Of a DNA stretch of 64,000 nucleotides, positions 23,801 to 38,714 are shown in pieces. The DNA comes from Fimbriosthenelais zetlandica (lineage: Eukaryota), in the NCBI GenBank assembly GCA_977030845.1, contig OZ365113.1, positions 10,912,001 through 10,976,000 of the forward strand. The letters run 5' to 3'. Below the pieces are notes generated by a model, which had not been told where the DNA came from, ran no database searches, and saw only the letters and a program-made list of their open reading frames with translations. Both the position numbers and the translations under genes were made by a program. The first letter of the stretch is position 1, and each line of letters opens with the position of its first letter.

Positions 23801-26800
23801 TGAAGATTTAAAAAAAAAATCATTATAAATTTATATTACAAAAAATGAATCAGAAATTTTTTTTTTTTTTTTCCGCCCGCCCCCAAAATATTTAGACCTA
23901 TTTTGTCCGCGAACCAAACAATTAAAAAAATGTGGCCTAAGGCGGAAGACTATATTTACACACAATATCATGACATACATTGACGGGTGGGGGCGGTCTA
24001 GCGGGGGGGGGGGGGGGGGGGGGGCTGGAAACGGAGCCTCTTTTGCCTATCAAGTATCATTGATGGTCTACAGTTTCTACCTAAACAGTTAAAGTTTGTT
24101 TGTACTCACCATCTCTGTCACTGAACTCTATTTCAGCAGGCGGTGCGGGTGGAGGGACATAGTGACTGACTCGTTCTGTTCGCACTGTCTCTGTCCTGTT
24201 CACCACGGTAACAGGCTCAGCTTTTGTTTTCGCACTCATTAGACGCTCAAGTTTCTTGATGTACACCCGACGTGTGGAATCTAAAATTTGAGGAAATATC
24301 ACAAAGTTAAATCACCAGGCAAAATAATTCATCCTTTTTTGTCCCCATTAAAATAGCATTCTCACATCATGACATGACATTGATTGCCTTATCAAAGTCA
24401 GTAACAAATTCAATGTTTTTCTCCAGGTTCCTTCCAATCTTTTCCTAATATCGGAGAATACCTGGGTAGCTTATACCAAAATCACACATCTCCTTATACA
24501 AATAGGTATCGGAGGACCCACAGAACAAATATTATATTACATATGTTCACAAGTAGGCAGTGCCTTAACACCTTATTACCCCCACCCCCACCCATCACTG
24601 GAGATACCATCAAGTGTTGACAGCATCAGTATCTCACCATGGGGTGGGGGCAGGGGGCAGACCTTAAGGTTAACGAGTTTCTACCCTTCCCTTCTTCCAT
24701 ACACCACGACCTAATACCCAAATACAACTTAGAGGAGCACTGGACAAGTTCAACAAAGAGAGAATCATCAGAGACAAAATGGCATATATAGAACCCCATC
24801 CACCTTGAACACCTTCTTTATCAAATCAACCTGTGAGAAGATTCAAGAAGATACATTATATCGGCGCTAGTACTACCTTAGAGTTTTACTCTAAGGTACT
24901 ACTAAGTACTCTGGGTTCAATGTATATCCAGGCACTTGGGTTAACAGCTGTTCGCATGAAATGAGTAGCACATGCTAATCTAACAGAGTTAGTACTTTGG
25001 AAATGCAGATTCCGAGCCATGGAGGATCAAATTACCCATTATATTACTTAAGATATTTATCCAGTTAAATAAAATATTTTGGTAGGGATTTCTAATTAGC
25101 CTATATATGGAGATGAGTGACATTTAATGAAATCTAATTTAGGCAATTGAATTCACCACAGAATTGGACTTTTTCTCAATGGTGGCAATATTTTTGAACG
25201 TCAACGTCAGTATGGTTCACTGTCATCAGTGTCATGCGATCAGTTCCCTACCATCGCCTGCTACAATCCTACAGGTGACCACAGCTGGACGAATATCTGC
25301 CAAGTTCTTATCCCTTATTTTAAATCTTTATGTGCCTCAAAAGCCAATGATTCATTGGCAGAAGAGAGTATGAACTTGGCACAGACTTGCAGCAGAAGAG
25401 GAAAATGGTCTATTAAATGTGCCACCAGTTTTAAAGTTTGCTATTTAATAAATTAGGAAAGATTAATTTTATTCTAGAAGATGGTTTGTTCTGAAAAGCG
25501 GCAAGCCACAGCACTATTAGAGTGTATTCCAAGAATTAAGCTACATGTAATGTGTATTTCTTTTTTGGATGGGGGCATGACATGACAAGATATAGTAACC
25601 TAATCATATCATAGTGCCTAACACACGGAAAGATATGAAAATGGTAACCCAGTAGAGTTCTGAATATAAATTTTCTAGAAACAGTAGGGAGGGGGGCAAC
25701 TCATATGACTCTCAGTCACTGAAGTCACTTACAAAGACTTTAATTATAAGTGTATAAAGTTCCTCTTAGGATTTTGATGTCCTTTTATAAATAACAACGA
25801 CCTCAATGTTCAATAAGGGACAGTAACACTGACATGTTTGATATACATGTAGTGACAAGAGCCCAACTCACTGACTATAAATTAAGGCATTAAGGGACTC
25901 TTCCACACCCAAATTTAGGTTATCCACGTTGGGTTAACTTAACCCACTAAATATATCAGCATAACAATTCAAAAAGAAACTATTTATGTCAGTTGGTACA
26001 AACATGATATTTAATACTAGGTGCGTCATTCACTGTGCAAAGATCCACAAAATCTTAAGCGAGAAAGATGTTTGGCATGAGGTTGGTAGGTTTGTTAACA
26101 TGTGAGGAAGGCGTATGGCCTGGTGACACATGAACCTCTTTTTTACCCTTCATTTCAGGGCCCCGCCATCATTTTGTCCCCATTTGTCATAGTTTGACTT
26201 TCCCTATTAAGAGCAGTGAAAAGCGCCAAGCCCTAACAACTTAACAACTTTTAAGCCCGCATTACACAATAATGCAATCAATTAAGTTTCCCTGTGCTCA
26301 GATGGCAACTAGATACAGATTACAAATTGGCAGGGAAATGGACAGAAAGTTGGTGATCTGTGCTTATGTCACCACCTCACCTCCTAGTGACCTACATGCA
26401 TTATGTTGTGATTATATTATAACAGTATAATATGGGGATTTCCAAGCCAGACACTGAGACATGGATACATTCAGTTAAACCAGGAATAAAGTAATAAATC
26501 AGTATACATATCACTTGCCCTAAATATCAACAAGTTTTCGCAGTATCACTGAATAGTAAATAACGTTAGAGCAACGAGTATAGAATGAAGTTGGTTAGAC
26601 TTTGAGGTAGCCTAGTATGATGTATTTTTAAGATGAGCATACTGCAGCAGGTTACAGGCAGGCCACCTGTCTGTGAGGGAACATAAATTACACAGATATC
26701 AGTGGCATATATCTCATGGGCTCTAACTTAGTGGCAGTCTGAACCCAGGAGCAAGGTTTTCAGGGGTTTCCTTTAACAAGTTTTTTTTGCTATGTAGCAT

Positions 26801-28169
26801 ACCCCTCCAGTACACTGACAACAAAGTGGCCTTACGTATATATTGGACTAGAAGCAGGACTGAGAGAGATTGGCAGTCAAAATAGATAATAAGAAATCTG
26901 TACAATGAAGAGTTCAAATGACATCTTGTGATCAGCTCATACTTCCATTATAGTACATTCAATGATAATCAAATGGTGAGAACCTGTGACATGCCCCAGG
27001 TCTTGTGCCGGAAGACAAACCCAAGCATCTAAGTCTGTCATTAATAGCCCTACAACCACGCCATTATTTCCATAATTACATACATGTATTATAGTTATTA
27101 GTAACAGTTATTTAATTCAGGGTATTAAACCATGGTTTGTTCAATATTTAAACTTCAAACTGAGATAAGAAAAATCAAGGCTTGGAAATAAAAATTGAAT
27201 GATTTCTTCACATAAACATTCTCATATTAAAAATTTATAGATATCTATACAAAATAATAAATAAAAAATAACTGACCAGTGATTGGTCCCGCATTGACTC
27301 CATGTTGTTTGAGGGCAGCCCTCAGTTCATCGTCAGAAAGCTGGTCAACGTTGGCCTGTCCGTTCATACTGCTCGTCTCACTAGAAACTTTCTTAGTGGG
27401 TGACCCGGGCTTTTTCTGCAACAATATAAGATATAGATAAGTTTATAAAAGACGCAATATATTATGTATCGGGATATCTGAATATGTATAGGTCTAGATC
27501 TATAGGTAAAACTAAAAGAGGTAATGTGATAATTCCCGAGACCTAGTCTTGAATAGATCCAGTACTGGTGGAATTTGTTGGAATGTCTTTAGCAAGAGAC
27601 GATGGCCTTCAAAAATCTAGGTGATATAAATTAATTTAATAGGCGATAGATAACTCCAAAATTTGAACTTATTGTCTTATATGACAGATATTTCCAAAAA
27701 GGACAATCTAATATTGTGACATACCGTAGTCTGGCGTAGACTACTGACAATGAATGAGAATGTGTATTCACACAAGACTTGTCGTCTCTGATTCCTAGCA
27801 TTGAATGAGGCAGTGAATCAATCAAGTCCCCCTTCGTGTCAGAGACGTTGGTCAAGTTCAAGTGTCTCGAAACAAGTATTGGATTCAGTATTGTGTAATG
27901 GTTATAGGCCTAGGTCTTACCTGACCTATAAATAAATATAGCATGGAGATGACTAACACTGTTCGTTGGAGTGAGTGTTTGTTTTGTTTTTTTTATCATC
28001 CACCGGTCTCCGTGTCATCGAGGCACATGTCAAACCATACAAATGTCAAGGACGACCGTTTGAAATCCAAATCAAAACATTTTCATTTTACACGCGATGT
28101 GATGTGATTATTATTTCATTTCTCCTCAGGGAGAAATGAAATCAAGTTTTTCACCGCGTTTCTGTACAC

Positions 28170-28203
<34 letters not shown>

Positions 28204-31200
28204 TCATTTCTCCTCAGGGAGAAATGAAATCAAGTTTTTCACCGCGTTTCTGTACACTATTATTATTATTATTATTATTATTATTCTTATTATTGTTGTA
28301 GTTAGACAAATTTTAAATCGGCTTAAAATCGACTTTCTAATAGAGACAGGAATCTGGTCTTTGGCACACAGGTAGAGCATGGTCAGAAGATGTCAAATGT
28401 GGCAGGATTGACTTTCATGTCATGTCATGTCATGTCATAAAATGACGTCAAACTTGCATAACTGGAAAAATGTATTGGCTGTTTTTTTCAGAAATATTGC
28501 CAACCAAAAATCATGTCACTGGTATCAGGTAACATGTACTTGATGCCCTATCATTTGGTACCATCATTTGACCTGTGGCCTAATTACTGTCTGTTAATTA
28601 GCTAATTAACATGAAATGCAATCACTTAAATGCTATCTACTCCTAGCCTGGTTATTCCAGGTGAATGAAGGTTGCATTATGGACCCTTTAGAGGCTTCTT
28701 GTCATCATGATTAGTTTGATTTTTTAATTGACGTCATAATGACGTCATAATTGACGTCTTAATGACGTCATGGCATCTTTGGGTAAAAAATGGAAAAAAT
28801 GCTTCAAACATGTGAGGGATGGTCATATATGTCCAAATATAAAATATTGTGACAATCCATATTTTAATAAGGGTGTTAATTAAAAAAAAAAAAAAATTGC
28901 AATATGGGAAAAAACAAAGCCAGCAGCAGGATTCGAACCCACACTTACAACCACCATTGGATCACAAGACCAACAGCTTATCCATTGGGCCATGGAGACG
29001 GCATACATAAGCATGGCTTGTAGCCCAGTACCAATTGATCTGTATGTGATGCATGAGTAGTAAGTCAGGGTTGGTTTGGCTCATGATATAGATTGTGAAC
29101 TTTGACAGTCATTCAATGATTTGTGACTCCTATAAATTAATGGGAGTTGGGAAAGTTGGGGAAAATAAATCCTTAGATCTGGCTTGGACATTATTGGCCA
29201 TAAATATCACAGATTACCATGGTTACTATTTTCAATTGGCTTAAAATCGACTTTCTACTAGAGACAGGATTCTGGTTTTGGGTACACAGGTAAGGCATGG
29301 TCAGAAGAGGTCAAATGTGGGAGGTTTGACTTTCATATCATGTCATGTCATGTCATAAAATGATGTAAAATCAGGCATAACTGGGCAAATGTATTGGCCG
29401 TTTTTTCATAAATCTGGCCTACGAAAAATCATGTCACTGGTTATTCCAGGTGAATGGCAAGTTGCATTATGGACCCTTTAGAGGCTTCTTGTCATCATGA
29501 TTTTTTAATTGACGTCATAATGACATCTTAATGACATCATGGCATCTTTTGGTAAAAAGTGGATAAAAATGCTTCAAACATGTGAGGGATGGTCAGATAA
29601 GTCCAAATATAAAATATTGTGAAAGTCCATATTTTATTAAGGTTGTTCATTAAAAATAAATTTTTTTAAAAAATATGGGAAAAAAACAAGCCAACAGCAG
29701 GATTCGAACCCACACTTGCAACCACCATTGGATCTCAAGACCAAGTCATTATACCTCTAGGCTACAAGCCATGCTTGTTTGTGGAGTCTTGATGGCCGAG
29801 TGGTATTAGGTGTTGGTCTTGAGATCCAATGGTGGTTGCAAGTGTGTGTTCGAATCCTGCTGTTGGCTTGGTTTTTTCCCATATTTTTTTTTTATTTTTT
29901 TTTTAATTAACCCCCTCAATAAAATATGGATTGTCACAATGGATTGTCCAGGCAAATGACAAGGTGCATATATGGACTCTTTAGAGGCTTCTTGTCATCA
30001 TGATGTTTTCAATTTTTTAATTGACGTCATAATTGACATTATAATGATGTCATGGCATCTTTGGGTAAAAAATGGAAAAAATGCTTCACACATGTGAGGG
30101 ATGGACAAATACATCCAAATATAAAATATTGTGACAATCCATATTTTATTAAGGGTGTTAATTAAAAACAAAAAATTTAAATTATCGGCAACAAAAAAAA
30201 GCCAACAGCAGGATTCGAACCCACACTTGCAACTACCATTGGATCTCAAGACCAAGACCTTAACCCGCTGAGCCATGCTAGACACATGCATGGCTTGTAG
30301 CCCACTGATCTATGGTGGATGAGAAGTAAGTCAGGGTGGTTTGGGCTCAAGATTTCAATTCCATATGGTTCCACTGGTTCTTATTATTGTTGTAGTTAGA
30401 CAAATTTTAAATCGGCTTAAAATCGACTTTCTAATAGAGACAGGAATCTGGTCTTTGGCACACAGGTAGAGCATGGTCAGAAGATGTCAAATGTGGCAGG
30501 ATTGACTTTCATGTCATGTCATGTCATGTCATAAAATGACGTCAAACTTGCATAACTGGAAAAATGTATTGGCTGTTTTTTTCAGAAATATTGCCAACCA
30601 AAAATCATGTCACTGGTATCAGGTAACATGTACTTGATGCCCTATCATTTGGTACCATCATTTGACCTGTGGCCTAATTACTGTCTGTTAATTAGCTAAT
30701 TAACATGAAATGCAATCACTTAAATGCTATCTACTCCTAGCCTGGTTATTCCAGGTGAATGAAGGTTGCATTATGGACCCTTTAGAGGCTTCTTGTCATC
30801 ATGATTAGTTTGATTTTTTAATTGACGTCATAATGACGTCATAATTGACGTCTTAATGACGTCATGGCATCTTTGGGTAAAAAATGGAAAAAATGCTTCA
30901 AACATGTGAGGGATGGTCATATATGTCCAAATATAAAATATTGTGACAATCCATATTTTAATAAGGGTGTTAATTAAAAAAAAAAAAAAATTGCAATATG
31001 GGAAAAAACAAAGCCAGCAGCAGGATTCGAACCCACACTTACAACCACCATTGGATCACAAGACCAACAGCTTATCCATTGGGCCATGGAGACGGCATAC
31101 ATAAGCATGGCTTGTAGCCCAGTACCAATTGATCTGTATGTGATGCATGAGTAGTAAGTCAGGGTTGGTTTGGCTCATGATATAGATTGTGAACTTTGAC

Positions 31201-34200
31201 AGTCATTCAATGATTTGTGACTCCTATAAATTAATGGGAGTTGGGAAAGTTGGGGAAAATAAATCCTTAGATCTGGCTTGGACATTATTGGCCATAAATA
31301 TCACAGATTACCATGGTTACTATTTTCAATTGGCTTAAAATCGACTTTCTACTAGAGACAGGATTCTGGTTTTGGGTACACAGGTAAGGCATGGTCAGAA
31401 GAGGTCAAATGTGGGAGGTTTGACTTTCATATCATGTCATGTCATGTCATAAAATGATGTAAAATCAGGCATAACTGGGCAAATGTATTGGCCGTTTTTT
31501 CATAAATCTGGCCTACGAAAAATCATGTCACTGGTTATTCCAGGTGAATGGCAAGTTGCATTATGGACCCTTTAGAGGCTTCTTGTCATCATGATTTTTT
31601 AATTGACGTCATAATGACATCTTAATGACATCATGGCATCTTTTGGTAAAAAGTGGATAAAAATGCTTCAAACATGTGAGGGATGGTCAGATAAGTCCAA
31701 ATATAAAATATTGTGAAAGTCCATATTTTATTAAGGTTGTTCATTAAAAATAAATTTTTTTAAAAAATATGGGAAAAAAACAAGCCAACAGCAGGATTCG
31801 AACCCACACTTGCAACCACCATTGGATCTCAAGACCAAGTCATTATACCTCTAGGCTACAAGCCATGCTTGTTTGTGGAGTCTTGATGGCCGAGTGGTAT
31901 TAGGTGTTGGTCTTGAGATCCAATGGTGGTTGCAAGTGTGTGTTCGAATCCTGCTGTTGGCTTGGTTTTTTCCCATATTTTTTTTTTATTTTTTTTTTAA
32001 TTAACCCCCTCAATAAAATATGGATTGTCACAATGGATTGTCCAGGCAAATGACAAGGTGCATATATGGACTCTTTAGAGGCTTCTTGTCATCATGATGT
32101 TTTCAATTTTTTAATTGACGTCATAATTGACATTATAATGATGTCATGGCATCTTTGGGTAAAAAATGGAAAAAATGCTTCACACATGTGAGGGATGGAC
32201 AAATACATCCAAATATAAAATATTGTGACAATCCATATTTTATTAAGGGTGTTAATTAAAAACAAAAAATTTAAATTATCGGCAACAAAAAAAAGCCAAC
32301 AGCAGGATTCGAACCCACACTTGCAACTACCATTGGATCTCAAGACCAAGACCTTAACCCGCTGAGCCATGCTAGACACATGCATGGCTTGTAGCCCACT
32401 GATCTATGGTGGATGAGAAGTAAGTCAGGGTGGTTTGGGCTCAAGATTTCAATTCCATATGGTTCCACTGGTTCTTATTATTGTTGTAGTTAGACAAATT
32501 TTAAATCGGCTTAAAATCGACTTTCTAATAGAGACAGGAATCTGGTCTTTGGCACACAGGTAGAGCATGGTCAGAAGATGTCAAATGTGGCAGGATTGAC
32601 TTTCATGTCATGTCATGTCATGTCATAAAATGACGTCAAACTTGCATAACTGGAAAAATGTATTGGCTGTTTTTTTCAGAAATATTGCCAACCAAAAATC
32701 ATGTCACTGGTATCAGGTAACATGTACTTGATGCCCTATCATTTGGTACCATCATTTGACCTGTGGCCTAATTACTGTCTGTTAATTAGCTAATTAACAT
32801 GAAATGCAATCACTTAAATGCTATCTACTCCTAGCCTGGTTATTCCAGGTGAATGAAGGTTGCATTATGGACCCTTTAGAGGCTTCTTGTCATCATGATT
32901 AGTTTGATTTTTTAATTGACGTCATAATGACGTCATAATTGACGTCTTAATGACGTCATGGCATCTTTGGGTAAAAAATGGAAAAAATGCTTCAAACATG
33001 TGAGGGATGGTCATATATGTCCAAATATAAAATATTGTGACAATCCATATTTTAATAAGGGTGTTAATTAAAAAAAAAAAAAAATTGCAATATGGGAAAA
33101 AACAAAGCCAGCAGCAGGATTCGAACCCACACTTACAACCACCATTGGATCACAAGACCAACAGCTTATCCATTGGGCCATGGAGACGGCATACATAAGC
33201 ATGGCTTGTAGCCCAGTACCAATTGATCTGTATGTGATGCATGAGTAGTAAGTCAGGGTTGGTTTGGCTCATGATATAGATTGTGAACTTTGACAGTCAT
33301 TCAATGATTTGTGACTCCTATAAATTAATGGGAGTTGGGAAAGTTGGGGAAAATAAATCCTTAGATCTGGCTTGGACATTATTGGCCATAAATATCACAG
33401 ATTACCATGGTTACTATTTTCAATTGGCTTAAAATCGACTTTCTACTAGAGACAGGATTCTGGTTTTGGGTACACAGGTAAGGCATGGTCAGAAGAGGTC
33501 AAATGTGGGAGGTTTGACTTTCATATCATGTCATGTCATGTCATAAAATGATGTAAAATCAGGCATAACTGGGCAAATGTATTGGCCGTTTTTTCATAAA
33601 TCTGGCCTACGAAAAATCATGTCACTGGTTATTCCAGGTGAATGGCAAGTTGCATTATGGACCCTTTAGAGGCTTCTTGTCATCATGATTTTTTAATTGA
33701 CGTCATAATGACATCTTAATGACATCATGGCATCTTTTGGTAAAAAGTGGATAAAAATGCTTCAAACATGTGAGGGATGGTCAGATAAGTCCAAATATAA
33801 AATATTGTGAAAGTCCATATTTTATTAAGGTTGTTCATTAAAAATAAATTTTTTTAAAAAATATGGGAAAAAAACAAGCCAACAGCAGGATTCGAACCCA
33901 CACTTGCAACCACCATTGGATCTCAAGACCAAGTCATTATACCTCTAGGCTACAAGCCATGCTTGTTTGTGGAGTCTTGATGGCCGAGTGGTATTAGGTG
34001 TTGGTCTTGAGATCCAATGGTGGTTGCAAGTGTGTGTTCGAATCCTGCTGTTGGCTTGGTTTTTTCCCATATTTTTTTTTTATTTTTTTTTTAATTAACC
34101 CCCTCAATAAAATATGGATTGTCACAATGGATTGTCCAGGCAAATGACAAGGTGCATATATGGACTCTTTAGAGGCTTCTTGTCATCATGATGTTTTCAA

Positions 34201-34987
34201 TTTTTTAATTGACGTCATAATTGACATTATAATGATGTCATGGCATCTTTGGGTAAAAAATGGAAAAAATGCTTCACACATGTGAGGGATGGACAAATAC
34301 ATCCAAATATAAAATATTGTGACAATCCATATTTTATTAAGGGTGTTAATTAAAAACAAAAAATTTAAATTATCGGCAACAAAAAAAAGCCAACAGCAGG
34401 ATTCGAACCCACACTTGCAACTACCATTGGATCTCAAGACCAAGACCTTAACCCGCTGAGCCATGCTAGACACATGCATGGCTTGTAGCCCACTGATCTA
34501 TGGTGGATGAGAAGTAAGTCAGGGTGGTTTGGGCTCAAGATTTCAATTCCATATGGTTCCACTGGTTTTCCTACCCCCATTAACATGACCACAAGTGAAA
34601 TGAAATATCTGTAATTGCAGCAATTACTGTGATGACTAGTTCTTGTAATAAAGTGAAAGATATCCTGAACTATGTAGGCTACAAGTCGCCTATCAGTTAA
34701 TAATATAACACCATCTACTGACAGGTTTTTAAAATTAAATGGTTAAAGGAAAAACACTACAGGGGTTGGAGGCCTAGACAAGTACTAAAGTAGATACGAA
34801 CCTTGTTGCGCTTGGAAGGTGAGAGATTGACTGCAGTTTCTTCATCGCTGGAAAACTCCATGCGATCTCGGTTTTCGATGTGTGTCTTGTACAGTTCCAC
34901 GTACACATCCTTTTTGGCGTCCCTCGGGAAGGGTACGTTGTATTTTGCCAGCTCTGATTTGAGCTTGTCCTTTGTGAATGAAGCCAT
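20885..34987 (-). CDS. TMPO: LAP2beta/thymopoietin-like inner nuclear membrane protein (LEM-like + LEM + C-terminal TM)
   Basis: Exons 34987-34802, 27415-27277, 24280-24110, 21834-21813, 21619-21554, 21218-20885, in phase. The N-terminus FTKDKLKSELAKYNV..KKDVYVELYK..EFSSDEE is LEM-like plus the LAP2 FSSDEE motif. The LEM domain is VDQLSDDELRAALKQHGVNAGPITDSTRRVYIKKLERL. An acidic/Pro-rich linker leads to the TM segment FPIWVQVLIFLAVAAVVYFII and a short tail. The symbol reflects domain architecture; orthology is not tested. Confidence 0.85.
23591..23937. mobile_element. MITE with 3-bp TAA target duplication (PIF/Harbinger, Tourist-like)
   Basis: TIRs GGCCACATTTTTTT(T)ATTGTTTGGTTCGCGGAC ... 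GTCCGCGAACCAAACAATTAAAAAAATGTGGCC, with TAA on both sides (23588-23590, 23938-23940). Confidence 0.8.
28919..28999 (-). pseudogene. tRNA-Leu-derived cassette 'a' (anticodon position TGT); also at 31013-31093 and 33107-33187
   Basis: GTCTCCA TG GCCCAATGGATAAGCTG TTGGT CTTGTGA TCCAA TGGTGGTTGTAAGT GTGGG TTCGAAT CCTGC TGCTGGC, followed by a T-run. A/B boxes are present and the acceptor stem is partly mismatched. Confidence 0.65.
29690..29770 (-). pseudogene. tRNA-Leu-derived cassette 'b' (anticodon position TGA, rearranged 5' end); repeated at +2094 and +4188
   Basis: The 3' two-thirds, TTGGTCTTGAGATCCAATGGTGGTTGCAAGTGTGGGTTCGAATCCTGCTGTTGGC, is nearly identical to cassettes c and d. The 5' part is replaced by the inverted upstream flank of cassette c. 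Confidence 0.6.
29786..29867 (+). pseudogene. tRNA-Leu-derived cassette 'c' (anticodon position TGA); also at 31880-31961 and 33974-34055
   Basis: GTCTTGA TGGCCGAGTGG TATTAGGTG TTGGT CTTGAGA TCCAA TGGTGGTTGCAAGT GTGTG TTCGAAT CCTGC TGTTGGC, 82 nt. It has a perfect A-box TGGCCGAGTGG, a B-box GTTCGAATCC, and T6 4 nt downstream. Confidence 0.7.
30201..30282 (-). pseudogene. tRNA-Leu-derived cassette 'd' (anticodon position TGA); also at 32295-32376 and 34389-34470
   Basis: TCTAGCA TGGCTCAGCGG GTTAAGGTC TTGGT CTTGAGA TCCAA TGGTAGTTGCAAGT GTGGG TTCGAAT CCTGC TGTTGGC, then T8. Six of seven acceptor pairs form (two G-U). Confidence 0.7.
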
Positions 34988-35526: not shown

Positions 35527-35661
35527 AGAACCGACCTCGGTTTGGGACGGGGGTCATATCAACACCACCTCGGCGCTTGGAATTGACTCGGCTACGCCTC
35601 GTCAATACCAAGCGCCGAGGTGGTGTTGATATGACCCCCGTCCCAAACCGAGGTCGGTTCT
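35527..35661. mobile_element. 135-bp foldback/palindromic MITE-like element
   Basis: The 54-bp arms at 35527-35580 and 35608-35661 are perfect reverse complements. They are followed inward by one mismatch, ATTGAC/GTCAAT pairing, and a 13-nt loop TCGGCTACGCCTC. No clear TSD. Confidence 0.75.
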
Positions 35662-36595: not shown

Positions 36596-38518
36596 TTAAT
36601 CCATTTCTTCAACTGTGGGTCCTCGGCCACAGTTGCCAGAAGGAGAGGCACCAGAGTGACAACCACCGGCGTCGCCATGGAGCTTGGTCATCACAGGATT
36701 GCACACCTTCTCCAACTCCTTCATCTCATGTTCAAACTCCTCTTTTTCAGCCAGTGAGTTGGCATCCAGCCACTTCATTGTCTCACCACACTTCTTCAGC
36801 ACAGAATCCTTGTCTTCTGAAGCTAGTTTATCATCAGCTGCTTCGTTTACAGCTTGTTGGTAACTGAACACAAGTCCTTCCAGCTGGTTCCTTGCTGTAA
36901 TCCTTTCTCTTTGCTTATCATCTTCGTCCTTGTATTTCTCTGCTTCTGAAACCATGCGATCAATATCAGCTTGGGAAAGTCTTCCGCGATCATTTGTAAT
37001 GGTGATGGTATTTGATTTCCCAGTGCTCTCATCTCGGGCTGTGACATTCAGAATGCCATTGGTGTCCACATCAAAAGTGACTTCGATCTTTGGAACACCC
37101 CTTGGTGCTGGAGGTATACCGGAGAGTTCAAAACTGCCCAGTTTGTTGTTGTCTGTCGTCATTGCTCGTTCACCTTCATACACTTGGATGGTCACTCCTG
37201 GCTGATTATCAGCGTATGTGGTGAAGGTCTGAGAAGTCTTGCTTGGAATGGTAGTGTTTCTCTTGATCAGGTTTGTCATAACTCCACCAGCTGTTTCAAT
37301 ACCAAGAGATAAAGGTGCGACATCCACAAGCAAGAGGTCATTGATTGTTTTGTCATTTACTCCAGTCAAAACAGCAGCTTGAACTGCTGCTCCATAAGCC
37401 ACAGCTTCATCTGGATTGATGCCTTTATTAAGCTCCTTACCACCCATGAACTCCTGTAGAAGTTTCTGGATTTTGGGAATCCTCGTCGATCCTCCAACCA
37501 ATACAACATCATGGATTCTAGTCTTGTCTATTTTGGCATCCCTCAAAGCCTTCTCTACAGGATCGAGGGTCTGTCTAAAGAGATCAGCACAGAGCTCTTC
37601 AAACCTGGCCCTTGTGATGGAAGTATAGAAGTCAACACCTTCATACAGGGCATCAATCTCTATGTTAGCCTGAGCACTGTTGGACAGAGTACGTTTAGCT
37701 CTTTCACAAGCTGTTCTCAGCCTGCGAAGAGCACGGGCGTTGGAGCTCAGATCTTTCTTGTATTTCCTTCTGAATTCTTCTTTGAAGTGAGCTACCATGC
37801 GGTTATCAAAGTCCTCTCCGCCCAAATGGGTGTCTCCAGCTGTGGCTCTAACCTCAAACATGGATCCCTCACTTACAGTCAAGATGCTCACATCAAAGGT
37901 GCCACCTCCAAGATCAAAGATCAGAACATTCTTCTCACCTGACAAGTTCTTGTCCAGTCCATAAGCCAGAGCAGCAGCAGTGGGTTCATTGATGATCCTC
38001 AATACATTAAGTCCAGCTATAGCTCCAGCATCTTTGGTGGCTTGACGCTGAGAGTCGTTGAAATAAGCTGGGACGGTGACTACAGCATCAGTCACTTTTG
38101 ATCCAAGGTATGCTTCAGCAATTTCTTTCATTTTCACCAAAACCATAGAGCTGATTTCCTCAGGAGCGAAGCTTTTTTCCTCACCCTTGTGCTCTGCTTC
38201 TATTCTCGGTTTTCCTCCATCATTCCTGACAGAGAATGGCCACTGCTTCATGTCCCTCTGCACTGTCTCATCAGTGAATTTCCTTCCGATCAGTCGTTTA
38301 GCATCAAAGATGGTGTTCTTTGCGTTCATGGCAGCTTGGTTCTTTGCTGCGTCTCCAATGAGACGCTCAGTGTCTGTAAAGGCCACATAACTGGGAGTTG
38401 TTCTGTTGCCCTGGTCGTTAGCAATTATTTCCACTTTCCCATGCTGGAAAACTCCCACACAGGAATAGGTTGTTCCAAGGTCAATGCCAATGGCTGGTGC
38501 AATGTTCTTTCCAGACAT
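36596..38518 (-). CDS. HSP70: Cytosolic heat-inducible HSP70, intronless, 640 aa
   Basis: Uninterrupted ORF. The true ATG is at 38518 ([19 protein letters not shown]); the track's start at 38548 is a TTG. All three HSP70 signatures are present ([37 protein letters not shown]), along with RARFEEL. There are no GGMP repeats, and the C-terminus is GPTVEEMD. Confidence 0.98.
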
Positions 38519-38714
38519 TTTCTTTTCTTCTTCAGAATATAACTCCAACTGTCAAAGTTCCTATTTCCTCAATATGTATTCCTTCGGTAGACTCAGTATC
38601 TCCTGTGCTTGCTGGATATTTTGTCACTTGCCAATAGAGGTATACAGTTATAATGCTTTTCTGTATAACTATGTAGGCCTACCTCTTGTCTTTACTGCTG
38701 TGAAAGAATCGGTG

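What the first reader, a model, noticed from the sequence alone, without database searches (positions are those of the whole stretch)
28113..34630. Helentron/HINE-like element whose interior is a higher-order array of tRNA-bearing monomers
The ends fit the published layout of non-autonomous Helentrons (DINE-1/HINE type): a 5' sub-terminal repeat folded with an adjacent inverted repeat, a microsatellite, central tandem repeats, then a 3' sub-terminal repeat (GTGAAATGAAAT) and a short stem-loop (GTAATTGCAGCAATTAC). The interior has three levels. Old diverged monomers A (~920 bp), B, an inverted fragment and a partial C make up one 2,094-bp unit, and the unit is tripled. Every monomer carries a tRNA-derived Pol III cassette and a CRE cluster. 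A rolling-circle element that captured a tRNA gene and amplifies it as satellite-like higher-order repeats is not something I can match to a named family. It sits in intron 1 of a nuclear-lamina gene, ~170 bp from exon 1.
Basis: partly seen in the sequence, partly recalled or inferred. Interest (0 to 1): 0.75.

Follow-up and report, generated by a model that had tools for sequence, protein, structure and literature searches.

The report
Young Helentron-derived transposon with tRNA-like cargo
This 6.5-kb insert in the first intron of a nuclear-lamina (LAP2-like) gene is one copy of a recently active, non-coding rolling-circle transposon (a HINE) of about 200 units; its repeated interior carries decayed tRNA-like mini-genes, an unusual cargo in an otherwise well-known kind of element.

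Summary
It has two 88-bp head units (palindrome plus (ATT)n), a 2,084-bp body present three times at an exact 2,094-bp period and 100% identity, and one tail (GAAATGAAAT, 7-bp hairpin, GATGACTAGTT).

Head, body and tail occur together at all 20 other loci I read, 97.7-100% identical. The genome holds about 206 heads, 217 tails and 881 tRNA-like cores. Every insertion is bounded by TT, with no longer duplication. One paralogous empty site has 2 nt there.

Protein-coding partners exist. On C30, C31 and C27, a variant head, Rep, helicase, endonuclease and the matching variant tail lie in that order on one strand (24.3, 23.1 and about 38 kb).

The two termini haplotypes differ by concerted changes in the 5' repeat, its hairpin partner and the 3' repeat. 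Arrays elsewhere look like nested self-insertion into the element's own (ATT)n.

The tail-less tripling here is private to this locus. The tRNA-like units keep B box and terminator but have eroded 5' parts; expression is untested.

This scan met the same family before on other DNA. Verdict: a HINE, new variant of a known kind.

The parts
28111..28112 (+). 5' boundary TT (target and/or terminal T's)
   Evidence: Similarity among 17 copies starts exactly at TTATTTCATTTC; upstream flanks differ.
28107..28282 (+). Two identical 88-bp head units. Each has the 5' subterminal repeat ATTTCATTTC(TCC), the adjacent inverted repeat (GGA)GAAATGAAAT 4 nt away, and about 30 nt of conserved sequence followed by (ATT)n. 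Palindromes at 28113-28142 and 28201-28230.
   Evidence: The genome holds 182 exact palindromes against 0 for the control pattern, and 206 heads at up to 3 mismatches.
28258..28295 (+). (ATT)n microsatellite ending CTTATTATTG, the junction to the body
   Evidence: The same 39-nt junction is found exactly in the coding elements on C30 and C31.
28284..30377 (+). Repeat unit 1 (2,094 bp): monomer A 28296-29213, B 29214-29791, inverted fragment 29792-29940, C 29941-30379
   Evidence: The 2,084-bp body is 97.7-100% identical to 26 full units at 20 other loci.
30378..32471 (+). Repeat unit 2, 100% identical to unit 1; tail-less junction at 30362-30401
   Evidence: The junction 40-mer occurs only twice in the genome, both in this element.
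32472..34565 (+). Repeat unit 3, 100% identical; second tail-less junction at 32456-32495
28918..28999 (-). tRNA-like unit of monomer A (also at +2094 and +4188). ARAGORN calls it 'Thr(TGT)'. Perfect B box GGTTCGAATCC, near-consensus A box, T6 run just after the 3' end.
29690..29762 (-). tRNA-like unit of monomer B (also at +2094 and +4188), truncated at its 5' third. It faces the inverted unit as a 110-nt, 86% complementary foldback.
   Evidence: (I19).
29783..29866 (+). Inverted tRNA-like unit (also at +2094 and +4188). Consensus A box TGGCCGAGTGG, B box with one change, T6 run.
30199..30283 (-). tRNA-like unit of monomer C (also at +2094 and +4188). ARAGORN calls it 'Ser(TGA)'. Rfam tRNA 28.2 bits (cut-off 29). 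T8 run.
28729..28770 (.). CRE cluster of monomer A: 3 perfect TGACGTCA plus 1 near-perfect in 45 bp. Single perfect sites at 28443, 29510 and 30022. All recur at +2094 and +4188.
   Evidence: 18 sites in the element; 0.54 expected per window.
34566..34641 (+). Tail: 3' subterminal repeat GAAATGAAAT at 34597-34606, hairpin GTAATTG-CAG-CAATTAC at 34611-34627, terminal TGTGATGACTAGTT ending at 34641
   Evidence: The genome holds 217 tails, of which 37 have the TG-type end seen here.
34805..34987 (-). Coding part of exon 1 of the host gene (thymopoietin/LEM-like domain), GT donor at 34804-34803
   Evidence: PF08198, 46.5 bits.
27248..27442 (-). Open frame holding exon 2 of the host gene (first half of the LEM domain); the second half lies in 24084-24311
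   Evidence: PF03020, 41.5 and 23.4 bits.

Best explanation
This is a non-autonomous Helentron (a HINE) of a young family with about 200 units.

- Mobilisation (inferred): it is moved in trans by Rep-helicase-endonuclease proteins of 23-38-kb coding elements in the same genome that carry near-identical ends.
- Recognition signals (inferred): the head (5' subterminal repeat folded with its inverted partner) and the tail (matching 3' subterminal repeat, hairpin, terminal ...GACTAG) are the likely recognition signals. The support is concerted change of all three repeat copies between two lineages.
- Target (shown): insertion is at TT, usually T-W-A|TT, with no further target change.
- Arrays (inferred): the element's own (ATT)n is made of this target. 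New copies therefore often land just behind a resident head, giving stacks of heads followed by body-tail units.
- This copy (shown that the junction is private; cause inferred): after or during insertion into intron 1 of a LAP2-like gene, the head unit was doubled and the body tripled locally. Unequal exchange or replication slippage between short T-rich homologies would do this and leaves a single tail.
- tRNA-like units (inferred): they are passenger relics of a class-II (Ser/Leu-type) tRNA gene. They still carry Pol III promoter boxes and terminators, but the cloverleaf is decaying. They are most likely neutral cargo.
For: Layout and copy behaviour:
- Layout as published for HINEs: against PMC4067079 and PMC7492417.
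- Head, body and tail are linked at all 20 loci read.
- Bodies are 97.7-100% identical, median 98.8%.
- Invariant TT on both sides and no longer duplication in 14 loci; 5' flank is T at -3 in 13 of 14 and A at -1 in 11 of 14.
- A paralogous empty site has 2 nt where the occupied site has TT + element + TT.

Partners, all features on one strand at each place:
- C30: variant head 1052985, body start 1053060, Rep 1063525, PIF1 1065631, endonuclease 1066913, variant tail ending 1077273.
- C31: head 679345, body start 679261, Rep 669958, PIF1 667845, endonuclease 666564, tail ending 656197.
- C27: head 6870416, Rep 6894498, tail 6908382.
- Sources.
- Relatives of this Rep protein in other animals have the Rep + PIF1 + Exo_endo_phos architecture.

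Concerted change in the termini:
- One lineage has ATTTCATTTC / GAAATGAAAT / GAAATGAAAT. The other has ATTCCATTTC / GAAATGGAAT / GAAATGGAAT.
- Counts are 182 heads and about 178 tails (217 within 2 mismatches less the 39 type-ii) for the first, and 42 heads and 39 tails for the second.

Nested insertion:
- Heads and tails are about 1:1 genome-wide.
- In L014 and L017 the outermost head and the outermost tail are the rare type, with common-type copies inside.
- On C31 the coding element's variant head sits behind a common-type head.
- First heads have shortened (ATT)n.
- Units of one array are not sister sequences.

Tripling: its junction occurs only here.
Against: - The partner link rests on exact short matches and their order and spacing.
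- Their Rep/helicase and endonuclease parts lie in two frames on C30, C31 and C27.
- The one copy with a single 3,163-aa frame (C11:28272576-28276757) has no exact head or tail nearby.
- The partner's ends are the variant type, not the type in this window.
- Three landmark 34-35-mers from the monomers gave no exact hit inside the C30 and C31 elements. Shared sequence beyond the first 26 nt of the body is therefore unproven.
- The bounding TT can equally be read as a 2-bp duplication, or as an A|T target with a 5'-TT...CTAG-3' element.
- L006 and L016 do not have equal numbers of heads and tails.
- No reads were available to confirm the 100%-identical tripling.
Confidence: 0.85

Rival explanations
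1. The three identical 2,094-bp units and the two identical 88-bp heads are an assembly artefact, a mis-resolved repeat. The real allele would then have one body, or the usual body-tail array.
For: The units are 100% identical over 6.3 kb. The tail-less junction is found nowhere else. No sequencing run holding the locus could be found to check.
Against: The junction is a clean, in-phase join that occurs twice identically. The assembly resolves many other arrays of this family with 1-2% differences between units. A collapse would normally remove copies, not create a novel junction.
Confidence: 0.1
2. Arrays of the family, and by extension this one, arise from rolling-circle read-through or concatemer formation, or from unequal crossing-over of body-tail units, not from nested insertion.
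For: Tandem Helitron arrays made by missed termination are described in the literature (cited in PMC7492417, and PMC10701932). L006 and L016 have unequal numbers of heads and tails. Some bodies carry an extra monomer of about 830 bp, which shows that unequal exchange does occur.
Against: Concatemers would alternate head-body-tail. Instead heads are stacked at the 5' side and are 1:1 with tails genome-wide. Outer head and outer tail share the rare haplotype around common-type inner copies. Units of one array fall in different clades.
Confidence: 0.2
3. It is a cut-and-paste or foldback-type miniature element with a 2-bp TT target duplication, unrelated in mechanism to Helentrons. The nearby Rep-helicase genes would be coincidental neighbours.
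For: TT on both sides is formally a 2-bp duplication. The genome is rich in hairpin repeats with tRNA-like tips (earlier notes).
Against: The ends are asymmetric: the 5' end is a palindrome and the 3' end is a subterminal repeat plus hairpin, not true terminal inverted repeats. In three places the same variant head and variant tail bracket Rep, helicase and endonuclease in the same order. Rep-to-tail spacing is 13,748 and 13,761 bp in two of them.
Confidence: 0.04
4. The tRNA-like units and CRE clusters are working parts: Pol III genes, TFIIIC/insulator sites or enhancers that the element spreads. They may also serve as structured signals in transposition.
For: All four units per body keep a B box (perfect or one change) and a T6-T8 run within 10 nt of the 3' end. 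Three keep an A box. There are 881 cores in the genome. CRE motifs are about 30-fold enriched in the element.
Against: The 5' third is the most diverged part of each unit, so the acceptor stem no longer pairs. Only the C units approach the Rfam cut-off. The tRNA-like part is not better conserved than the rest of the monomer. No RNA data exist.
Confidence: 0.15

Closest known systems
DINE-1 / HINE (non-autonomous Helentrons; Thomas et al. 2014, PMC4067079)
   Same: 5' subterminal repeat with an adjacent inverted repeat, microsatellite, central repeats, 3' subterminal repeat followed by a short stem-loop, TT target without other target change, far more copies than the coding partner, and a partner that encodes Rep-helicase-endonuclease.
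   Different: The central repeats are 0.5-0.9-kb monomers carrying tRNA-like units and CRE clusters, not short satellite-like units. Whole elements stack by insertion into their own (ATT)n. The abundant lineage differs from the partner by a compensated change in all three repeat copies.
Cg_HINE elements of the Pacific oyster (Vojvoda Zeljko et al. 2020, PMC7492417), also pearl and DTC84 of bivalves
   Same: The left module has an 11-12-bp subterminal repeat plus a complementary repeat 1-12 bp away and ends in a microsatellite. The right module is about 60 bp, with the repeat followed by a palindrome. Tandem repeats lie in between. The host is a spiralian invertebrate by its HSP70 relatives.
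   Different: In the oyster no coding partner could be linked; here three are. The monomers here are several times longer and tRNA-derived. No sequence similarity to the oyster elements was tested.
Arabidopsis tRNA-Cys cluster overlapping annotated Helitrons (PMC10701932)
   Same: tRNA genes sit in tandem units associated with rolling-circle elements.
   Different: There the Helitron link is only an annotation overlap that Helitron finders did not confirm. [quoted passage not shown] Here the carrier has defined ends, about 200 dispersed units and coding partners, but the tRNA-like units are degenerate.
Canonical Helitrons and the Phytophthora proto-Helentron (PMC4067079)
   Same: Rep/helicase partner, a 3' hairpin near the end, and no target duplication. 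The end ...CTAG fits CTRR, and 5'-TT/3'-CTAG is the proto-Helentron pattern.
   Different: No 5'-TC. Subterminal inverted repeats are present. The partner carries an endonuclease. The base before the element is A in only 11 of 14 loci, so a strict A|T target is not met.

Membership tests
HINE (non-autonomous Helentron) | 11-15-bp subterminal inverted repeats near both ends | tested here: met
   ATTTCATTTC at 28113-28122 against GAAATGAAAT at 34597-34606. The first starts 2 nt from the 5' end; the second ends 35 nt from the 3' end. The two change together in the variant lineage.
HINE (non-autonomous Helentron) | Short inverted repeat next to the 5' subterminal repeat (DINE-1 type) | tested here: met
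   13-bp stem with a 4-nt loop, -12.1 kcal/mol, z -7.05.
HINE (non-autonomous Helentron) | Short palindrome after the 3' subterminal repeat, close to the 3' end | tested here: met
   7-bp stem with a 3-nt loop at 34611-34627, 14 nt from the end, invariant in all 40 tails read. Its folding energy alone is not exceptional (z -1.7).
HINE (non-autonomous Helentron) | Microsatellite after the left module and tandem repeats in the centre | tested here: met
   (ATT)n. Monomers A, B, C and an inverted fragment. Extra monomers occur in some copies.
HINE (non-autonomous Helentron) | Insertion at TT with no other target-site change | tested here: met
   14 of 14 loci have TT on both sides and no longer repeat. 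One paralogous empty site has 2 nt; a second paralogue differs by a 13-nt indel. This cannot be told apart from a 2-bp TT duplication. No allelic empty site was available.
HINE (non-autonomous Helentron) | No coding capacity; dispersed, multi-copy | tested here: met
   No open frame of 180 aa or more in the element. 206 heads and 217 tails on many contigs.
HINE (non-autonomous Helentron) | A coding Helentron (Rep-helicase-endonuclease) with the same ends | tested here: met
   C30, C31 and C27 have variant head, Rep, PIF1, endonuclease and variant tail on one strand. This rests on exact 31-40-nt matches and coordinates; the interiors were not read. Their ends differ from this window's by the compensated change and a few head positions (94.5% over 73 nt).
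Canonical Helitron | 5'-TC ... CTRR-3' ends, insertion between A and T | tested here: not met
   The 5' end is TTATTTC. The 3' ...CTAG fits CTRR. The base before the element is A in 11 of 14 loci only.
tRNA gene / tRNA-derived SINE | Cloverleaf scoring above the tRNA model cut-off; for a SINE, a tRNA head read through into a body and tail | tested here: not met
   The best unit scores 28.2 bits against a cut-off of 29, and the others are not reported at E<0.1. ARAGORN of 12 units with odd anticodons. A T6-T8 run follows each unit directly, so there is no SINE body.

The most novel reading that the evidence does not exclude
The family is a mobile carrier of Pol III/TFIIIC-binding tRNA-like units and CRE clusters. 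It has seeded about 880 such sites, some next to promoters as here (163 bp from exon 1 of a LAP2-like gene), and these act as insulators, enhancers or small-RNA genes. Separately, the concerted change of 5' repeat, hairpin partner and 3' repeat would be the first natural compensatory evidence that Helentron ends must pair or be read as one motif by Rep.
Probability: 0.15. Interest if true: 0.75.

Novelty: new variant of a known kind. Interest (0 to 1): 0.5.

Why it matters
Helentrons and their non-coding derivatives are abundant in invertebrates. Their transposition has never been studied biochemically, and in the best-studied mollusc case no coding partner could be tied to the HINEs.

This genome offers several things together:
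- a very young family;
- linked partners;
- two termini haplotypes that differ by coordinated changes at three sites, which says which bases matter;
- a clear picture of how arrays grow, by self-insertion into the element's own TT-rich microsatellite.

The tRNA-like cargo bears on a claim in the literature that no Helitron-type element has been shown to carry a non-coding RNA gene.

For the host, a 6.5-kb insert with 12 Pol III-type units and 18 CRE motifs has enlarged a roughly 0.85-kb first intron of a nuclear-lamina gene about eight-fold.

Tried and rejected
1. The 1.69-kb stretch between head and body in L003 and L014 is not a piece of the coding parent. It is a separate abundant repeat with over 500 candidates, also found alone.
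2. Sequencing runs to find an empty allele, confirm the tripling or see RNA: no run holds the locus, only microsatellite words matched.
3. Looking up this species' Rep protein in public collections to fetch flanks: the best relative is only 54% identical, so the species is not in the collection.
4. Other Helentron groups as partners: the copies on C1, C11, C13 and C14 have no exact head, tail or tRNA-like core nearby.
5. Long head-to-tail intervals as parents (C11:27.18-27.20 Mb, C1:32.31-32.32 Mb, C13:38.07-38.09 Mb, C11:21.51 Mb): none contains Rep, PIF1 or endonuclease.
6. Three allele-specific landmark k-mers to map monomers inside the parents: no hits there. This is uninformative if the parents carry other alleles.
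8. Selective conservation of the tRNA-like part within monomers: not seen.
9. A second paralogous empty site (the L005 site against the L003 flank) was not clean, with a 13-nt difference.

Full report
**What is there**

The window is eukaryotic. Its HSP70 gene at 36596-38548 has spiralian invertebrates as its best named relatives. The species is not in the protein or read collections.

From 28,111 to 34,641 on the plus strand lies a repeat-built element. It has three parts.
- Head: two identical 88-bp units. Each holds the palindrome ATTTCATTTCTCC-TCAG-GGAGAAATGAAAT, about 30 conserved nt, and (ATT)n. The palindrome folds as single-stranded DNA at -12.1 kcal/mol, z -7.
- Body: a 2,084-bp body present three times at an exact 2,094-bp period without a single difference.
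- Tail: ...GTGAAATGAAAT-ATCT-GTAATTGCAGCAATTAC-TGTGATGACTAGTT.

Each body is built of monomer A (918 bp), B, an inverted fragment and C. These share a module at 80-97% identity.

Each body holds four tRNA-like units, three on the minus strand and one on the plus strand, so 12 in all.
- ARAGORN calls six of them, with Thr(TGT) and Ser(TGA) anticodons.
- Rfam's tRNA model gives the C units 28.2 bits, just under its cut-off of 29. It does not report the others.
- All four per body keep a B box (perfect, or one change) and a run of 6-8 T within 10 nt of the 3' end.
- Three keep an A box.
- The 5' third is the most diverged part. B has lost it at the junction with the inverted copy.

TGACGTCA occurs 18 times in the element, against 0.54 expected per window.

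**Gene context**

- Exon 1 (34805-34987, minus strand) encodes a thymopoietin/LEM-like domain (PF08198, 46.5 bits).
- The LEM domain is split between open frames at 27248-27442 and 24084-24311.
- The element therefore sits in intron 1 of a LAP2-like gene, in the opposite orientation, 163 bp from the exon 1 donor.
- It accounts for 6.5 kb of a roughly 7.4-kb intron.

**It is a family**

The genome (447 Mb) holds these counts. Control patterns gave 0 in every case.

| Feature | Count |
|---|---|
| Exact head palindromes | 182 |
| Heads within 3 mismatches | 206 |
| Tails within 2 mismatches | 217 |
| tRNA-like cores within 1 mismatch | 881 |

I fetched 20 other loci. In all of them head, body and tail occur together and in the same order. 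The 26 full bodies there are 97.7-100% identical to the window's, median 98.8%. Many copies are single units of about 2.2 kb (coordinates).

**Ends and target**

- Similarity among copies begins at TTATTTCATTTC and stops at GATGACTAGTT.
- In 14 loci with both flanks, the only shared flank feature is this TT on each side. No longer duplication is present.
- The 5' flank prefers T-W-A before the TT: T at -3 in 13 of 14 loci, A at -1 in 11 of 14.
- One insertion (L003) lies in a repeat whose paralogue next to L005 is uninterrupted. There, 2 nt stand where the occupied site has TT + element + TT. A second such comparison was not clean.
- The data fit insertion between two T's without target change, as published for Helentrons.
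- They fit equally a 2-bp TT duplication, or an A|T target with a 5'-TT...CTAG-3' element. Sequence alone cannot separate these readings.

**Coding partners**

The genome has 30 Helitron-type Rep matches in about five groups.
- One group is canonical Helitron (Rep plus PIF1 in about 1,400 aa).
- Three groups have DUF6570 + Rep, then PIF1, then an AP-endonuclease-like domain about 3.4 kb downstream. In several copies all lie in one open frame of 2,200-3,661 aa.
- Relatives of this protein in mussels, sea urchins and fishes have Rep + PIF1 + Exo_endo_phos. These groups are therefore Helentrons.

For one group the ends could be tied to the gene by exact short matches.

| Feature | C30 (plus strand) | C31 (minus strand) | C27 (plus strand) |
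|---|---|---|---|
| Variant head | 1052985 | 679345 | 6870416 |
| (ATT)n-end/body-start 39-mer, exact as in the window | 1053060 | 679261 | not found |
| Rep | 1063525 | 669958 | 6894498 |
| PIF1 | 1065631 | 667845 | 6896604 |
| Endonuclease | 1066913 | 666564 | 6900097 |
| Variant tail | ends 1077273 | ends 656197 | at 6908382 |
| Length | 24.3 kb | 23.1 kb | about 38 kb |

- Rep-start-to-tail-end is 13,748 bp on C30 and 13,761 bp on C31.
- The 31-nt hairpin-plus-terminus of these tails is identical to the window's.
- In these three copies Rep/helicase and endonuclease fall in two frames.
- The copy with a single 3,163-aa frame (C11:28272576-28276757) has no exact ends nearby.

Three allele-specific landmark words from the monomers did not hit inside the C30 and C31 elements. 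What is shown as shared is therefore the head, the microsatellite, the first 26 nt of the body and the tail. Whether the tRNA-like monomers are also in the parents remains open.

**Two termini haplotypes**

| | 5' repeat | Hairpin partner | 3' repeat | Heads | Tails |
|---|---|---|---|---|---|
| Common type (this window) | ATTTCATTTC | GAAATGAAAT | GAAATGAAAT | 182 | about 178 |
| Variant type (coding elements and some HINEs) | ATTCCATTTC | GAAATGGAAT | GAAATGGAAT | 42 | 39 |

Counts are; the common-type tail count is the 217 within 2 mismatches less the 39 type-ii tails. In the loci I read, outermost head and outermost tail are always of the same type. This three-site concerted change is the best available evidence that these repeats are functional recognition or pairing elements. 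That reading is an inference.

**How arrays form**

Elsewhere the usual layout is 1-5 heads, then body-tail-(ATT)n-body-tail and so on. Every inner body keeps a full tail. Five observations point to nested insertion of whole elements into the (ATT)n just behind a resident head.
- Heads and tails are about 1:1 genome-wide and in most loci.
- First heads have shortened microsatellites. In L002 the two microsatellite parts add up to the usual length.
- Units of one array fall in different clades.
- In L014 and L017 a variant-type head and a variant-type tail bracket common-type copies. On C31 the coding element's variant head sits directly behind a common-type head, and a further body lies beyond its tail.
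- The preferred target T-W-A|TT is the microsatellite itself.

Other repeats also land in this microsatellite.

**This copy is different**

Its two heads are identical, including microsatellite length. Its three bodies are identical. The body-to-body junction lacks a tail, and that junction 40-mer occurs only twice in the genome, both times here. The tripling is therefore a private, very recent local duplication, or less likely an assembly error. It is not the way the family spreads. The closest relatives of this copy are at C25:9.37 Mb and C11:3.94 Mb, at 99.9-100% identity.

**Comparison with what is known**

Every structural criterion of DINE-1/HINE elements is met, and a partner is linked, which was not possible for the oyster HINEs.

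What is unusual:
- the tRNA-like, CRE-bearing monomers of 0.5-0.9 kb;
- the self-targeted stacking;
- the compensated termini.

A 2023 paper states that a confirmed tRNA gene in a Helitron would be the first non-coding RNA captured by such an element. I found no paper describing one.

**Earlier notes of this scan**

Earlier notes describe the same family in other windows and report a 23-24-kb parent. I used that as a lead and confirmed the parent independently by coordinates. I did not confirm their statement that the parent holds six tRNA-like units.

**Not done**

- No reads were laid.
- Nothing in this work touched a referred kind of step.

Noticed in passing
L003:2598-4288 (minus); also L014, L041-L052: A 1.69-kb repeat beginning with the palindrome CAAGCTAGAACCGGACT-GA-AGTCCGGTTCTAGCTTG. 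It has over 500 first-look candidates, many about 100% identical. It sits in the HINE's (ATT)n at several loci and also occurs alone, so it is a separate young mobile element of unknown type.
   Followed up: partly
L007:574-3745; L014 after the inner tail; L018:7400-9800: Arrays of monomers 70-87% similar to the body. They begin with AGCCTTTTCCCC...GGGGAAAAGGG directly after (ATT)n. This is an older or sister repeat family that uses the same landing site.
   Followed up: no
L019 (C38:12044600-12052000), element orientation about 4551: A truncated unit ends at an internal CTACTAG and is followed directly by TT plus a head. This mimics the true end GACTAG|TT and hints that ...CTAG|TT is the cleavage or joining motif.
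   Followed up: no
L010 (C37:4981400-4986800) flanks: This one insertion is flanked by an imperfect direct repeat of about 26 bp (AATAT..TAATATTAAAAATAGTTA..). It is probably a pre-existing tandem repeat in the target. No other locus shows it.
   Followed up: no
window 36596-38548 (-): An intronless HSP70 gene (650 aa, PF00012 845 bits) lies 1.6 kb upstream of the LAP2-like gene's exon 1. Its best named relatives are nemertean, brachiopod, mollusc and annelid proteins at 75-78% identity.
   Followed up: partly
window 35531-35657: A near-perfect hairpin that matches several microRNA models on both strands, well below their cut-offs (e.g. MIR4374, 70 bits against 105). It lies in the promoter region of the LAP2-like gene and is probably another small inverted-repeat element.
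   Followed up: no
G000 C1:31822673-31829232, C1:32324870-32328687, C10:15464832-15467621, C39:1743072-1746825: HINE copies and arrays with the variant-type head and tail (ATTCCATTTC / GAAATGGAAT). They form a smaller sister lineage of about 40 units that shares its ends with the coding elements.
   Followed up: partly
G000 C21:21057062, C21:2476712, C22:1685190, C23:3441286: Open frames of 2,350-2,520 aa with a weak PIF1-type helicase match but no Helitron Rep match. These are another large helicase-bearing element family.
   Followed up: no
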